Of a stretch of 64,000 bases of DNA, positions 5,984 through 60,428 are shown piece after piece. Under the pieces are notes generated by a model that saw nothing but the letters and a program-made list of their open reading frames with translations, was not told the DNA's origin and searched no databases. Each line of letters opens with the position of its first letter. The first letter of the stretch is position 1. The stretch spans positions 1 to 64,000 of the IMG/VR virus record IMGVR_UViG_3300035661_000001; one strand, 5' to 3'. Made by a program: the position numbers and the translations under genes.

Positions 5984-6014
5984 GGATAAGGGGCGGCGTT
6001 GCCGCCCCTTATCC
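5984..6014 (+). terminator. GC-rich 14-bp hairpin, terminator-like
   Basis: GGATAAGGGGCGGC-GTT-GCCGCCCCTTATCC after the 5976 stop; no clear U tract. Confidence 0.55.
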
Positions 6015-30095: not shown

Positions 30096-30143
30096 TTGAA
30101 TGATCTCCGAGGTAGAAATGGTATTACCTCGGAGATCATTCAA
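30096..30143. repeat. 19-bp perfect inverted repeat after ligase 1
   Basis: TTGAATGATCTCCGAGGTA / TACCTCGGAGATCATTCAA with a 10-nt loop. Confidence 0.9.
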
Positions 30144-42173: not shown

Positions 42174-43190
42174 ATGAGAGCTGATATTGTGATTGATTTG
42201 GTGAACGGTGACTCCGGAAAAGGAAAAGTAACACATCATCTCCTTGGAGAATCTATCAGGAACAATGTTCCATATACTCATGCTGTCCGGTATGGAGGAT
42301 CGTCCAACGCCGGACATTCGATCTATCACAATGAAAAGAAGTTCGTTACCCATTTGATTCCTGCCGGAGTCTTTTTTGGTATCCGATCAGTCATTGGTCC
42401 TGGATGTGTTTTGAATGTCAAGGCTTTTTTTGATGAGCTTAATGATCTCAAAATTAATGGTATCGACTGTGATAGACTTGTTAAGATTGCGCATAACAGT
42501 CATATCGTGACTGATGAACATCTTAAAGAGGATGGTCTTGATACCAAAATCGGTACGACTAAGCGCGGCGTCGGTCCAGCTTACCGTGATAAGTATGGTA
42601 GAACTGGTGTCCGTGCTGAGTCTATTCCTGAGTTGAAGCCTTATCTGATTGATTTTCTTGATGAGATTTTCGATGAGTCCAAGGGAGAAGCCAACCTCAT
42701 GTTGGAAGGTGCACAGGGACATTACCTGGACCCCATCTTCGGAGACTATCCGTACGTTACTAGTTCTCATTGTGGTGTTGGTGGAGCCATCATCAATGGA
42801 GTTCCGCATACGGCGATTGATATGGTGTTCGGCGCTTGCAAAGCATACGATACTTATGTCGGTGCGAAGAAGTTTGAACCAGATGGTGATGATGTTCTAC
42901 CATTGCTTCGTAAGGTCGGGTCCGAGTTCGGAGCAACGACTGGAAGACCAAGACAGTGTAACTATTTGAATCTGACTTCTCTTCGTCGAGCTTGTGAAGT
43001 GAATGACGTTACCCATCTGGTAGTATCGAAGATGGATGTTCTTCAGGAAGTGAATGTTTGGAAAGTTATCTGTGGTAGTAAGCTTATCGATATGGGTAAT
43101 GAAGATGACTTCAAAAGAATCGTGCATGGGTATGTTAATTCCAAAGGTGACAGAGACGTAATCTTCTCTTACACGCCACACGGAATTTGA
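42174..43190 (+). CDS. purA: adenylosuccinate synthetase (short form)
   Basis: GDSGKGK, NAGHS, HLIPAG, GTTKRGVGP.Y, EGAQG, YPYVTSS, GATTGRPR. Confidence 0.95.
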   Translation: MRADIVIDLVNGDSGKGKVTHHLLGESIRNNVPYTHAVRYGGSSNAGHSIYHNEKKFVTHLIPAGVFFGIRSVIGPGCVLNVKAFFDELNDLKINGIDCDRLVKIAHNSHIVTDEHLKEDGLDTKIGTTKRGVGPAYRDKYGRTGVRAESIPELKPYLIDFLDEIFDESKGEANLMLEGAQGHYLDPIFGDYPYVTSSHCGVGGAIINGVPHTAIDMVFGACKAYDTYVGAKKFEPDGDDVLPLLRKVGSEFGATTGRPRQCNYLNLTSLRRACEVNDVTHLVVSKMDVLQEVNVWKVICGSKLIDMGNEDDFKRIVHGYVNSKGDRDVIFSYTPHGI

Positions 43191-43210: not shown

Positions 43211-43305
43211 GCCACTATAGCTCTCAAGGGACTAAGAGCATTGCATCCTGGTGTTACTTTTGTTTCGGATGTAAGATGCGGGTTCGAGCCCCGTTAGTGG
43301 CGCCG
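43211..43305 (+). tRNA. tRNA-like gene with 24-nt anticodon loop (17-nt insertion)
   Basis: GCCACTA/TAGTGGC; GCTC/GAGC; TTGCA(TCC)/(GGA)TGTAA; GCGGG-TTCGAGC-CCCGT. Confidence 0.65.
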
Positions 43306-43950: not shown

Positions 43951-44350
43951 ATTTTGAAATCGGCATGGATTGAAACGAACCCTTTCGAGGGACAGATGAG
44001 ATTACGTAACGCTGGATGCCCATTAATGGGTTATAGAAATATAGCAGCCCAGCTTGCGTTTTCAGGGCGTCCAATCCTGAAAATCATTTGCAATGACTCC
44101 TAAAAACCAGGGTGGTCGCCCTGGGCGATTTGTGCCGATAAAGAGCCGCTGACACTCCCGATCACCTGTGGGTTCGAGTCCCACTCCATTCTTGGTATCA
44201 AGAATGGCTTGGCGGAAATTGGGATACGCGAGGATCAAAACACGATTCTCGATTGGGAAATCGAAGCGGCACGACCGTGGTAAGGGGGCATCTTCCCGCC
44301 ACATCTATGGGAGGGGAGAGATTCTCTCCTCTCCCCTCCCATGGGTCGAG
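43951..44350 (+). ncRNA. Structured non-coding region with a T arm and 3' acceptor upstream of a Leu-type 5' half
   Basis: GTGGG-TTCGAGT-CCCAC-TCCATTC (44168-44191), then GAATGGC-TTGGCGGAAATTGGGATACGCG (44202-44230); 14-bp GC hairpin at 44307-44342. Confidence 0.5.
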
Positions 44351-44485
44351 TTTAACTATACAAAAATCATTTACGGAATGCCTATGATACATCAACTGGC
44401 ATCACTTCCGTTAATGCTAGATTTTTTCCAATTGCCCGCACTGTGGGCTATAATTTTCCTGCTCCTTCGTTTGAGAAAAAAAATC

Positions 44486-45148
44486 ATGAAAAGCAAAATC
44501 CTCAGTGCTCTCAACCCGGTAGTTCATCAGTATCCCATGCGGTTGTTGCCGACGCCGGTTAAAGATGCATTGGTTACAAAATTGTTTACCAGCAAGCTGA
44601 TCACGGCTTTGCCGCACCATGTAATGGTAGATAATGATAAGACCTGGATGTATTATCAGGTTCCCAAACCTACTTGTACTTCTTTTTGTTTGGAGATCAA
44701 CCTTGCCAACAAGGCAGTTGGTTTTCATATTGGAGAGTATGAAGGTGCTTATAACGAACGCAATGTTGATAGCGATCGCACAAAGAGACCTCTCGAAAAA
44801 GATAAGGTCATCATCAAAGGTTATCTTCTCCAGCGAAATCATAGAAATGAACTTCTGCAAGAGAACATCAGGATTACGTTTCACCCATCTCAAATGGTGA
44901 AGATTCACGCTCAGGTTGAGCTGAGTTCTCGTGACCGGCAGATTCTTTTTTGTTACGGTTTTCTCCGTGATGGTTATGCCAGACGCGAAGCACTGTCCCG
45001 TCTGAACGTTGAGAAAATAGAACTGGAGAGCCTGACTCTCAGGGGTCTTATCAAGAAAACTAGCAATGGTCATTTGTTGACAGCTTTGGGCGAAGCTAAT
45101 CGTCTTCCGGTTTCCAAAGACAATAATGTAGCCATTGATCAATGGTGA
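44486..45148 (+). CDS. hypothetical protein with C-terminal wHTH-like region (paralog of 45177-45833)
   Basis: KGY..FHPS...LS.R.R..ALSRLN motif shared. Confidence 0.75.
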   Translation: MKSKILSALNPVVHQYPMRLLPTPVKDALVTKLFTSKLITALPHHVMVDNDKTWMYYQVPKPTCTSFCLEINLANKAVGFHIGEYEGAYNERNVDSDRTKRPLEKDKVIIKGYLLQRNHRNELLQENIRITFHPSQMVKIHAQVELSSRDRQILFCYGFLRDGYARREALSRLNVEKIELESLTLRGLIKKTSNGHLLTALGEANRLPVSKDNNVAIDQW

Positions 45149-50477: not shown

Positions 50478-50903
50478 GTGACTATCTATCCTCGCCATAC
50501 TGTATACATTGTGGATACAAAACGTCTTCCATTCGAGCCTTCAATGGTTGATGTGTTGGAGGGATACGCTTACTTCAAAGATAAGTATCAAGCGCTCCCT
50601 TCTGAGATTGTGTTCGAGGAAAGAAATGATAACGACGCATCTCGCTGCAAATGCTGCGGAGATCGTGGCGTAACATATTCTGCCATGGTTTTTTCTCGTT
50701 CGGTATTCAACGAGAATTATGATGCAGAAGTTCTTGCTTGGAGAAAAGCCATCGCAGAGCGCGATCAGCTTGTTCAAGCAGCGGCGCTGAAGTTAAAGAT
50801 CGAAAATGATTCCAAGTTGGCTCGTTTGGCATGGAAGGGTCTTCATAGGCAAGAAAGAATTACCAGAAAAGATCTCGGACGTTCAACCCTTTTGCGGGGT
50901 TAA
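50478..50903 (+). CDS. hypothetical protein
   Basis: AGGAG SD. Confidence 0.7.
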   Translation: MTIYPRHTVYIVDTKRLPFEPSMVDVLEGYAYFKDKYQALPSEIVFEERNDNDASRCKCCGDRGVTYSAMVFSRSVFNENYDAEVLAWRKAIAERDQLVQAAALKLKIENDSKLARLAWKGLHRQERITRKDLGRSTLLRG

Positions 50904-50908
50904 ACATA

Positions 50909-51369
50909 TTGATTTATAAATCAATATGTTTAACAAGTAGAGCTGTCCGCCATGAAGTAACAAGAGTTTCTAACTCTTTTAGAGAGGCATTTCATTTAAG
51001 ATGGTTAGCCCTCCAACTAATTACCCAAACATTTCCTTTAATGTATCCTTTTGATGCATCAATTCTATCTAATGATGGACTAGAATTTGAACGTTGTTTT
51101 TCAGATATAGATAAAGGTATATTGAAAATTGGGCAAAGGGTGGGAACGATAATATCGCTAAGTTCAATAGAAAATTCTATACCAGCTTTTTTGGCTCTTG
51201 CTTTAGCGCGCTGATAAAGTACCTTACTAGTATCTTTACTTACCCATCGAGTATAACGTGTGCGTCTAGCAGCAGGAGAAGAAGACGGAGATTTTTTCCA
51301 CCATCCAGGATGATTTTTCTTCCACTGACGATGATGCTCTCTTTTTTCTTCAGGATTTTTATTTTGCAT
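50909..51369 (-). pseudogene. HNH homing endonuclease with in-frame TGA near the C-terminus
   Basis: CPIF...SPSLDRID..KGYIKGNVWVISWRANHLK*NASLKELE; the reading frame continues after the stop at 50992-50994. Confidence 0.75.
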
Positions 51370-60356: not shown

Positions 60357-60428
60357 ATCTAGGTAGCTCAATGGCAGAGCTTCGCATCTAAGCGAAAGAC
60401 ATGAGTTCGATCCTCATCCTAGAACCTA
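60357..60428 (+). tRNA. tRNA-like gene with 6-nt anticodon loop AUCUAA (CUA, or UCU with a deletion)
   Basis: TCTAGG/CCTAGA; GCTC-AATGGCA-GAGC; TTCGC-ATCTAA-GCGAA; ATGAG-TTCGATC-CTCAT; C-CTA. Confidence 0.7.

What the first reader, a model, noticed from the sequence alone, without database searches (positions are those of the whole stretch)
43951..44350. Possible circularly permuted tRNA-like gene
Seen: a perfect T arm and 3' acceptor strand (44168-44192) lie upstream of a complementary 5' strand and Leu-type D arm (44202-44230). The two are joined as CCATTCTT-GGTATC-AAGAATGG. Downstream CGAGGATC can pair with GATCACCTG just before the T arm, or with GATTCTCG around a CAA-containing segment. 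Established: this order occurs in two-piece tmRNA genes and in permuted algal and archaeal tRNAs. Alternative: GCATGGA near 43962 is the 5' strand of a ~230-nt one-piece RNA. There is no Ala identity or tag frame.
Basis: partly seen in the sequence, partly recalled or inferred. Interest (0 to 1): 0.6.

Follow-up and report, generated by a model that had tools for sequence, protein, structure and literature searches.

The report
Permuted tRNA-Leu mimic in a megaphage
A giant phage carries a tRNA-Leu-like RNA whose parts are in rotated order, with the acceptor end sealed by a loop and the chain entering through the variable arm; it is most likely a non-decoding tRNA look-alike, not a working tRNA or tmRNA.

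Summary
Window 44145-44270 (+) folds into a complete five-helix, class-II tRNA cloverleaf in circularly permuted order: closing stem, 4-nt V region, T arm, a 9-bp "acceptor" sealed by a 4-nt loop, Leu-type D arm and an anticodon-like hairpin. All 38 predicted pairs are intact. If the two halves are swapped in silico, ARAGORN calls a tRNA at default settings. Its nearest relatives among the phage's own tRNAs are the tRNA-Leu genes, tRNA-Leu(CAA) first.

It sits in a 433-nt, strongly structured gap of a complete 452-kb phage genome with at least 41 tRNAs. A working tRNA or tmRNA is unlikely. It has no U33, no CCA and no Ala identity pair. The discriminator is base-paired, there is no tag frame, and no Rfam or ARAGORN hit.

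The closest known kind is the YrlA-type bacterial or phage Y RNA, which has the same T arm, closed acceptor, D arm order. Membership fails: 10.9 bits against a cut-off of 69, no Ro60/TROVE gene, no GNCGAA motif, and entry through the variable arm rather than the anticodon stem.

Similar closed-acceptor units occur in other phage tRNA arrays, mostly without TROVE. One of them (L033) shares this topology. No RNA data exist, so function is inferred.

The parts
44145..44150 (+). outer stem, 5' strand (pairs with 44265-44270)
   Evidence: MFE and pair probabilities 0.93-1.0
44156..44163 (+). closing stem, 5' strand (8 bp with 44251-44258). It occupies the place of the variable arm of a class-II tRNA, and the chain enters and leaves the cloverleaf here.
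   Evidence: probability 0.95-1.0; ARAGORN draws it as the long variable arm after rotation
44164..44167 (+). V region ACCU. The last U can form the A15-U48 Levitt pair. Two of its bases vary in a natural variant.
44168..44184 (+). T arm: 5-bp stem with a 7-nt loop carrying the canonical T54, Psi55, C56 and A58 positions
   Evidence: the only part matched by Rfam YrlA, 10.9 bits
44186..44207 (+). closed 'acceptor' hairpin: 9 Watson-Crick pairs (44186-44194 with 44199-44207), loop GUAU at 44195-44198. The G1-C72 equivalent is 44202-44191.
   Evidence: the loop base 44197 varies in the variant strain
44212..44229 (+). D arm: 3-bp stem and 12-nt loop with the G18-G19 pair of residues, tRNA-Leu type
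44230..44250 (+). anticodon-arm-like hairpin: 7 bp, loop AAAACAC. It resembles the anticodon arm of the phage's tRNA-Leu(CAA) but lacks C32 and U33.
44251..44258 (+). closing stem, 3' strand
44265..44270 (+). outer stem, 3' strand
43958..44139 (+). upstream structured domain of the same intergenic gap: a long closing helix with several hairpins. It is not shown whether this is part of the same RNA.
   Evidence: whole gap z = -6.3; a natural variant keeps a pair as G-U at 44051
44272..44346 (+). downstream three-way domain that includes a 14-bp perfect purine/pyrimidine hairpin (44307-44342). This is a likely 3' end or stability element, one of about 25 such long perfect hairpins in the genome.

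Best explanation
Window 44145-44270 encodes a tRNA mimic. It is a circular permutation of a class-II tRNA-Leu(CAA)-derived cloverleaf, with the acceptor stem sealed by a tetraloop and the RNA chain entering and leaving through an extended variable-arm helix.

Shown: the fold, its tRNA-Leu ancestry, the retention of the tertiary-interaction positions U8, A14, A15-U48, G18-G19 and the T loop, and the absence of decoding and charging features.

Inferred: it is transcribed with or behind the upstream gene as part of a structured, non-coding transcript of about 130-400 nt. It folds into an L-shape. It then acts without decoding, as a handle or decoy that is recognised by proteins that read the tRNA elbow and body. 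Candidates are modification enzymes, RNase P, the CCA-adding enzyme, or a host tRNA-targeting or Ro-like factor. This is the principle established for YrlA-type Y RNAs, but here it would work without a phage Ro60.
For: 1. Fold. The minimum-free-energy structure and pair probabilities give five helices with 38 intact pairs. ARAGORN calls the rotated sequence a class-II tRNA at default settings.

2. Ancestry. The seven best matches among the phage's 42 tRNAs are all tRNA-Leu, with Leu(CAA) at 448354 best at 58 of 78 identical.

3. Conservation. A strain about 3% diverged (run X7) differs in the unit only at the V region (two sites), the acceptor loop (one site) and one terminal pair. The gap is no more diverged (3.3%) than the flanking genes (3-8.5%).

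4. Not a working tRNA or tmRNA. Rfam and ARAGORN find nothing in native order. A33 replaces U33, there is no CCA, the position-73 equivalent is paired, and 3-70 is A-U.

5. Precedent. YrlA has the same T arm, closed acceptor, D arm order and is a tested tRNA mimic (PMC4201824).

6. Recurrence. Closed-acceptor units lie in other phage tRNA arrays. L033:5122-5246 has the same entry point and an intact anticodon arm. The L019-B and L159 pair shows compensatory changes.

7. Phage toolkit. The phage has its own RNA ligases and a CCA-adding type enzyme.
Against: There is no expression evidence: no RNA run holds the stretch.

No homologue beyond about 97% identity was found, so there is no covariation for this unit itself.

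The support from natural variation is statistically weak: four sites, P about 0.15.

No partner protein is identified. There is no TROVE, no RtcB and no LeuRS domain, and the neighbouring proteins are uninformative.

The region is littered with odd or decayed tRNA-like sequences, so a neutral by-product is possible.
Confidence: 0.5

Rival explanations
1. It is a cis-acting element of the mRNA. A tRNA-like structure in the 3' untranslated region of the upstream gene, or the 5' leader of the downstream gene, marks a processing site or protects the transcript end. It would be tRNA punctuation by RNase P, Z or III rather than a free-standing RNA.
For: It lies between two same-strand genes with no convincing promoter directly upstream. 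It is flanked by long helices and followed by a 14-bp perfect hairpin of a type scattered over the genome. The units in other phages sit inside tRNA arrays, where RNase P and Z processing defines their ends.
Against: The sealed acceptor, with positions 73-75 paired, is a poor RNase P or Z substrate. The elaborate preservation of the D-loop and T-loop identity positions is more than a processing signal needs.
Confidence: 0.15
2. It is a neutral remnant. A tandem duplication of a tRNA-Leu gene lost the outer halves, leaving the 3' half of copy 1 and the 5' half of copy 2. The complementarity of the strands is inherited and not selected.
For: The phage has tandem tRNA-Leu(CAA) genes. It also has about 15 orphan T arms and odd tRNA-like sequences. 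The anticodon-like loop looks like a decayed CAA loop. The unit is unique to this phage lineage.
Against: All 38 pairs are intact. The acceptor helix is extended by 3 extra Watson-Crick pairs into the former spacer. The variable-arm helix is lengthened to 8 + 6 bp, which a remnant does not predict. The variant strain changes only loops and one terminal pair. The same topology recurs independently in L033.
Confidence: 0.2
3. It is a true permuted or two-piece tRNA gene. The transcript is cut in the acceptor loop by RNase P and trimmed, and CCA is added by the phage or host enzyme. The two pieces then stay together through the closing helix, or the ends are ligated through a circular intermediate by a phage RNA ligase. 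The product would be a chargeable tRNA-like molecule.
For: The rotated sequence passes ARAGORN. The phage encodes RNA ligases and a CCA-adding type enzyme. M. smegmatis YrlA is cut by RNase P and receives CCA in vivo (PMC4201824). The related units L019-A and L033 encode ACCA right after the acceptor 3' strand.
Against: In this unit the loop is only 4 nt. Positions 73-75 are paired, there is no CCA, position 73 is U rather than the A required by bacterial LeuRS (established knowledge), and A33 replaces U33. There is no bulge-helix-bulge. There are no RNA data.
Confidence: 0.08
4. It is a two-piece tmRNA gene.
For: The order is that of a two-piece tmRNA, with the acceptor piece upstream of the 5' piece. 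Huge phages can carry tmRNA: a canonical one-piece tmRNA lies in L148.
Against: There is no hit to any of the tmRNA models, permuted ones included, even at E = 10, and none by ARAGORN. Pair 3-70 is A-U. There is no tag reading frame with a resume codon and a hydrophobic end. A full D arm and an anticodon-like arm are present, which tmRNA lacks.
Confidence: 0.02
5. The stretch is coding: an N-terminal extension of the downstream protein, as ORF 44168-45148.
For: The frame of the downstream gene is open for 72 codons upstream, to a GTG at 44168. The single variant site inside it (44197) is at a third codon position.
Against: The public gene call starts at 44384. The paralogue aligns only from residue 49. 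A promoter-like site at 44425-44454 suggests an even later start. The stretch is a perfect tRNA cloverleaf permutation.
Confidence: 0.03

Closest known systems
YrlA (Y RNA-like A; Rfam RF02553), the tRNA-mimicking Y RNAs of bacteria and phages
   Same: It has the same permuted order, T arm then closed 'acceptor' stem-loop then D arm, held on a terminal helix. The tRNA tertiary-interaction positions are kept. It occurs in phages. It has no decoding role (PMC4201824).
   Different: It scores 10.9 bits against a cut-off of 69, on the T arm only. The complete genome has no Ro60/TROVE gene. There is no GNCGAAN0-1G motif. The chain enters at the variable-arm position and a full anticodon-like arm is kept, whereas YrlA enters through the anticodon-stem position. 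The D arm is of the Leu type.
Circularly permuted tRNA genes of Cyanidioschyzon merolae and some archaea
   Same: The 3' half lies upstream of the 5' half, with a short linker between the acceptor strands. Rotation restores a cloverleaf that a tRNA finder accepts.
   Different: There is no bulge-helix-bulge at the termini. The linker is a 4-nt loop on an over-extended helix. The anticodon loop is not functional. The context is bacterial or phage, with no known splicing endonuclease, and no circular intermediate is shown.
Two-piece (permuted) tmRNA of alpha- and beta-proteobacteria and cyanobacteria
   Same: The gene order is acceptor piece before 5' piece, and both carry a tRNA-like domain.
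   Different: There is no Ala identity, no tag frame, no pseudoknots and no model hit. It has D and anticodon-like arms.
Closed-acceptor tRNA-like units in other phage tRNA arrays (found here: L019-A and -B, L159, L024, L071, L104, L119, L147 and others, and L033)
   Same: They have the T arm, sealed acceptor and D arm on a 7-13-bp closing helix. L019-B, L159 and L024 have Leu-type D arms. L033 has the same entry point and a retained anticodon arm.
   Different: Most enter through the anticodon-stem position and score 34-46 bits on YrlA over its full length. They sit directly between tRNA genes. This unit sits between protein genes inside a longer structured gap and shares no sequence with them beyond the tRNA-like motifs.
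The phage's own tRNA-Leu(CAA) genes (G000 448354-448437 and relatives)
   Same: They are the best sequence match: 16 of 17 in the T arm, plus the D arm and the 5' half of the anticodon arm.
   Different: The order is rotated, the acceptor sequence is unrelated, the anticodon loop is altered and the variable arm is opened.

Membership tests
YrlA (RF02553) | T arm, closed acceptor-like stem-loop and D arm in that order | tested here: met
YrlA (RF02553) | Score at or above the Rfam gathering threshold (69 bits) | tested here: not met
   10.9 bits on the T arm only; nothing in cmscan at E <= 10
YrlA (RF02553) | Encoded within about 4 kb of a Ro60 (TROVE) gene on the same strand | tested here: not met
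   No TROVE match in six frames of the complete 451,956-bp genome; the control genomes ring
YrlA (RF02553) | GNCGAAN0-1G motif near the 5' end | tested here: not met
   The motif is absent from 43951-44383. The nearest matches are AACGAACC at 43974 and ATCGAAGC at 44260.
YrlA (RF02553) | The tRNA-like domain joins the rest of the RNA through the anticodon-stem position | tested here: not met
   The closing helix is at the variable-arm position, and a separate 7-bp anticodon-like hairpin is present
YrlA (RF02553) | Binding by Ro60, and tRNA-type modifications | not testable with these tools
   This needs immunoprecipitation and modification mapping
Permuted tRNA gene (algal or archaeal type) | 3' half upstream of 5' half, and rotation gives a cloverleaf | tested here: met
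   ARAGORN at default settings calls the rotated sequence a class-II tRNA
Permuted tRNA gene (algal or archaeal type) | Bulge-helix-bulge motif where the transcript ends meet | tested here: not met
   There is an 8-bp continuous helix, a 5 x 6 internal loop and a 6-bp helix, with no 3-nt bulges around a 4-bp helix
Permuted tRNA gene (algal or archaeal type) | Functional 7-nt anticodon loop with U33 | tested here: not met
   The loop is AAAACAC, with A at position 33
Permuted tRNA gene (algal or archaeal type) | A processable single-stranded linker between the 3' and 5' acceptor ends | tested here: not met
   The helix continues 3 bp beyond 1-72, the loop is 4 nt, and there is no CCA
Permuted tRNA gene (algal or archaeal type) | Circular RNA intermediate | not testable with these tools
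   No RNA run holds the stretch
Two-piece tmRNA | G3-U70 alanine identity pair | tested here: not met
   The 3-70 equivalent is A-U (44204 with 44189)
Two-piece tmRNA | Tag reading frame and a match to tmRNA models | tested here: not met
   ARAGORN finds none. There is no tmRNA, permuted, alpha, beta or cyano tmRNA hit at E <= 10.
Canonical tRNA | Detected in native order by tRNA models | tested here: not met

The most novel reading that the evidence does not exclude
The unit, with L033 and L019-A in other phages that even encode ACCA after the acceptor 3' strand, could be a gene for a two-piece or circularly matured tRNA. The precursor would be opened in the acceptor loop by RNase P, given CCA by the phage's own enzyme, and either held together by the variable-arm helix or sealed by a phage RNA ligase. 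That would be the first permuted or split tRNA maturation pathway outside archaea and eukaryotes. The product might be a Leu-chargeable molecule that does not decode normally.
Probability: 0.08. Interest if true: 0.9.

Novelty: new variant of a known kind. Interest (0 to 1): 0.5.

Why it matters
tRNA mimics that cannot decode are rare, and mostly unexplained, tools of RNA biology. Examples are YrlA, tmRNA and viral tRNA-like structures.

This one is an exact circular permutation of a class-II tRNA with a new entry point, the variable arm. It lies in a complete megaphage genome that has no Ro60.

The pattern scans made for it show that sealed-acceptor tRNA-like units are common residents of phage tRNA arrays. 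Only a minority of the phage records carrying them encode Ro60: two of the five other records judged at least 90% complete.

If these RNAs are expressed, phages may use tRNA look-alikes for something other than Ro60 tethering. They might titrate or recruit tRNA-recognising host enzymes or tRNA-targeting defences. They also give a simple, testable set of natural permuted tRNAs.

Tried and rejected
1. Close relatives. blastn against 50,697 phage records found nothing. Neither did a search for relatives of the flanking proteins in IMG/VR or an exact 22-mer.

2. Relatives of the upstream protein at 46-58% identity. These carry ordinary tRNAs or unrelated structured gaps downstream. The L010 gap aligns only over its first 15 or so bases.

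3. attP or host tRNA fragment. The T arm plus acceptor 21-mer is absent from 185,579 species genomes.

4. Leu-type permuted pattern in bacterial genomes. Only tandem tRNAs were found.

5. Other YrlA-model hits in the second megaphage. These were dimeric-tRNA false positives.

6. RNA evidence. No RNA run exists. DNA contigs gave only a 3% variant, and three of its ten differences lie too near the contig ends to be listed.

7. Partner proteins. No TROVE, RtcB or LeuRS domains were found. The downstream paralogues have no family or fold lead. The upstream protein modelled well (pLDDT 83.8) but matched no solved fold.

8. Pair counts on the 17-unit core alignment. These are not independent evidence, because the units were chosen for perfect T and acceptor pairing, and the window's unit is one column out of register there.

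9. The rotated (joined) sequences. They were built from the files and run only through local ARAGORN in the script box.

Full report
**Context.** The window is the first 64 kb of a complete 451,956-bp virus record with direct terminal repeats. This is a megaphage found in microbial-mat and sediment metagenomes. ARAGORN finds 41 tRNA genes in it, and about 15 further T arms lie outside those genes. The finding lies in a 433-nt gap (43951-44383) between two same-strand genes of unknown function. One gene further upstream is a PurZ-like adenylosuccinate synthetase.

**The observation.** The T arm (44168-44184), a 9-bp sealed acceptor hairpin (44186-44207, loop GUAU), a Leu-type D arm (44212-44229) and a 7-bp hairpin with loop AAAACAC (44230-44250) are all enclosed by an 8-bp helix (44156-44163 with 44251-44258). 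That helix is prolonged, across an internal loop, by a 6-bp helix (44145-44150 with 44265-44270). Only four bases (ACCU) separate the closing helix from the T arm.

In tRNA terms the order is variable-arm strand, V, T arm, acceptor 3' strand, loop, acceptor 5' strand, D arm, anticodon arm, variable-arm strand. This is an exact circular permutation of a five-helix class-II tRNA, opened in the variable arm and closed at the acceptor end.
- The unit folds with z = -3.25 and the whole gap with z = -6.34.
- Every helix has pair probability 0.75-1.0 in the context of the full gap.
- I swapped the two halves in a script (44202-44258 followed by 44156-44193, with several trims of the stem). ARAGORN at default settings then called a class-II tRNA with a long variable arm each time.
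- In native order, neither ARAGORN nor any of the 4,227 Rfam models reports anything, even at E = 10.

**Origin.** I aligned the rotated unit to the phage's 42 tRNAs. The seven best matches are all tRNA-Leu, and the best is tRNA-Leu(CAA) at 448354 with 58 of 78 identical. It matches 16 of 17 in the T arm, the D arm and the 5' half of the anticodon arm. The hairpin loop looks like a CAA anticodon loop that lost C32 and gained bases. The acceptor sequence is unrelated. The unit is therefore a derivative of a phage tRNA-Leu gene.

**Is it maintained?** A contig from a rock metagenome (run X7) covers 43952-44258 at about 97% identity.
- Inside the unit it differs at two V-region bases, at one base of the acceptor loop, and at the terminal pair of the closing helix. 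The partner of that pair lies too near the contig end to be reported.
- In the upstream domain, one change turns an A-U pair into G-U.
- No inner stem pair is hit.
- The gap (3.3% diverged) is no more diverged than the flanking genes (3-8.5%).

This fits constraint, but with four sites it is weak (P about 0.15 by my estimate). All 38 pairs are intact. The acceptor helix is extended 3 bp into what would have been spacer. The variable-arm helix is far longer than in any of the phage's Leu tRNAs. A decaying duplication remnant does not predict any of these three features.

**What it is not.** A decoding or chargeable tRNA is unlikely, for these reasons:
- Position 33 is A.
- There is no CCA.
- The equivalents of positions 73-75 are paired.
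- Position 73 is U, whereas bacterial LeuRS needs A73 (established knowledge).
- The termini form no bulge-helix-bulge.

A tmRNA is close to excluded. Pair 3-70 is A-U, there is no tag frame, and there are no model hits. Full D and anticodon-like arms are also present. An attP-type copy of a host tRNA end is not supported.

**Closest known kind.** YrlA Y RNAs have exactly this T arm, closed acceptor, D arm order and are experimentally shown tRNA mimics. The M. smegmatis one is even cut by RNase P and receives CCA (PMC4201824). Jumbo phages with a TROVE protein and a tRNA-like partner have been noted before (PMC7824862). The window's unit fails the membership tests:
- It scores 10.9 bits against a cut-off of 69.
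- There is no TROVE gene in the complete genome.
- There is no GNCGAAN0-1G motif.
- It enters through the variable-arm position, with a retained anticodon-like arm.

It works like a YrlA in principle, but it is not one.

**Related units elsewhere.** Pattern scans made for this question found sealed-acceptor units in other phages.
- A 416,714-bp megaphage (L019) has two of them, flanking a tRNA-Asp gene in a tRNA array. They score 33.8 and 15.2 bits on YrlA over its full length. That phage does encode a TROVE protein, far from the array.
- A metagenome contig (L159) holds a homologue of the second unit with compensatory changes in the acceptor, closing and inner helices.
- A further, truncated scan plus a filter gave at least 14 more units that lie outside any called tRNA. 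Several have 4-6-nt acceptor loops that exclude tandem tRNAs. They score 35-46 bits on YrlA, below the cut-off.
- TROVE is present in only 2 of the first 12 such records, and in 1 of 4 that are at least 90% complete.
- A single-sequence covariance model of the window's unit found no second copy in its own genome. Its best foreign hit was L033:5122-5246, at 29.6 bits. Ordinary tandem tRNA-Leu genes in the window's own genome score nearly as high on this model (26.4 bits), so what singles out L033 is its structure, not its score. That unit lies between two tRNA genes. It has the same topology: closing helix, V hairpin, T arm, acceptor 3' strand followed by ACCA, a short linker, acceptor 5' strand, D arm, and an intact 5-bp anticodon arm with U33. 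Its complete 180,932-bp genome also lacks TROVE.

The window's unit is therefore one example of a wider and little-described habit of phages, and one of a rarer sub-type.

**Mechanism, with what is shown and what is inferred.** Shown are the fold, the ancestry, the absence of decoding and charging features, the absence of Ro60, and the presence of phage RNA ligases and a CCA-adding type enzyme. Inferred is that the RNA is made, folds into an L-shape, and is read by proteins that recognise the tRNA elbow and body. It would serve as a decoy or handle. I put this at 0.5. The rivals are:
- a cis processing or stability element of the surrounding mRNA (0.15);
- a neutral remnant of a tandem tRNA-Leu duplication (0.2);
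- a two-piece or circularly matured tRNA (0.08);
- a tmRNA (0.02);
- a coding extension of the downstream gene, whose frame happens to stay open back to 44168 (0.03).

**Limits.**
- No RNA data exist for this phage.
- There is no covariation for this unit itself.
- The flanking proteins gave no functional lead.
- The pair counts are circular, because the units were selected for pairing.
- The rotated sequences were used only in local scripts.

Noticed in passing
window 42174-43190 (+): A PurZ-like adenylosuccinate synthetase (Pfam PF00709, 6e-74; PHROG 1211 '2-aminooxy adenylosuccinate synthetase'). The megaphage may replace adenine by 2-aminoadenine in its DNA.
   Followed up: no
window 43211-43302 (+): A 92-nt tRNA (Rfam tRNA, 32 bits) that ARAGORN misses. 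It has a normal acceptor, D arm and T arm, but a 6-bp anticodon stem carrying an 18-nt loop. This is either a short intron-like insert or an expanded loop.
   Followed up: partly
window 33939, 39109, 39635, 40805, 57549, 58010; G000 77226, 144767, 177353, 417453, 426966, 446484, 448788: Well-formed T arms outside any called tRNA. Some belong to atypical tRNA-like sequences, for example a Leu(CAA)-like gene with an acceptor mismatch at about 177295-177385. The phage has many more tRNA-related sequences than the 41 that ARAGORN calls.
   Followed up: partly
G000 80119-80195; window 60357-60426: A tRNA with anticodon CTA (amber-reading, labelled Pyl by ARAGORN), and a tRNA with an undersized anticodon loop (ARAGORN reports a 2-nt 'anticodon'). 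Stop-codon recoding was not examined.
   Followed up: no
window 44168-44383 (+): The reading frame of the downstream gene stays open for 72 codons upstream, across the whole tRNA-like unit. The likely real start is ATG 44384 or ATG 44486, behind a promoter-like site at 44425-44454.
   Followed up: partly
window 44307-44342; also 5984-6014, 30096-30143 and 50899-50934 in the window, 69093-69124 and others genome-wide: About 25 perfect hairpins of 13 bp or more, several of them G-rich purine/pyrimidine and mostly without a T tail. They may be phage-specific terminators or processing sites.
   Followed up: partly
L019:3955-4345 (-), L159:5500-5640 (-), L160: Two Leu-type, YrlA-like permuted units flank a tRNA-Asp gene in a 416-kb megaphage that encodes a TROVE protein about 330 kb away. 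A homologue in another contig shows compensatory changes. One unit encodes ACCA right after its acceptor 3' strand.
   Followed up: yes
L033:5122-5246 (+): A permuted tRNA-like unit between two tRNA genes in a complete 181-kb phage without TROVE. It has an intact anticodon arm with a canonical 7-nt loop (U33 present) and an encoded ACCA. It is the best candidate seen here for a genuinely processable permuted or two-piece tRNA.
   Followed up: partly
L024, L043, L071, L085, L104, L119, L132, L138, L147, L148 (coordinates): At least 14 further sealed-acceptor tRNA-like units in IMG/VR phage contigs. The five checked that gave a YrlA match (in L071, L104, L119 and L147) score 35-46 bits, below the gathering threshold, and TROVE is found in only 2 of the first 12 records. 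A motif around CAGCAA follows the closing stem in L033, L121, L071, L138 and L075.
   Followed up: partly
L019:3870-3956 (-); L029; L014:1620-1700: Other odd tRNAs in relatives: a tRNA-Sec-like gene (37.5 bits), a tRNA with an insert of about 35 nt in the D loop, and a D-arm-less tRNA-like sequence with a 9-nt anticodon loop.
   Followed up: no
L014:5549-8387; L011:1-491: In relatives of the upstream protein, the neighbourhood holds Thg1-like, methyltransferase and RNA-ligase genes next to tRNA genes. This looks like a tRNA repair or maturation island.
   Followed up: no
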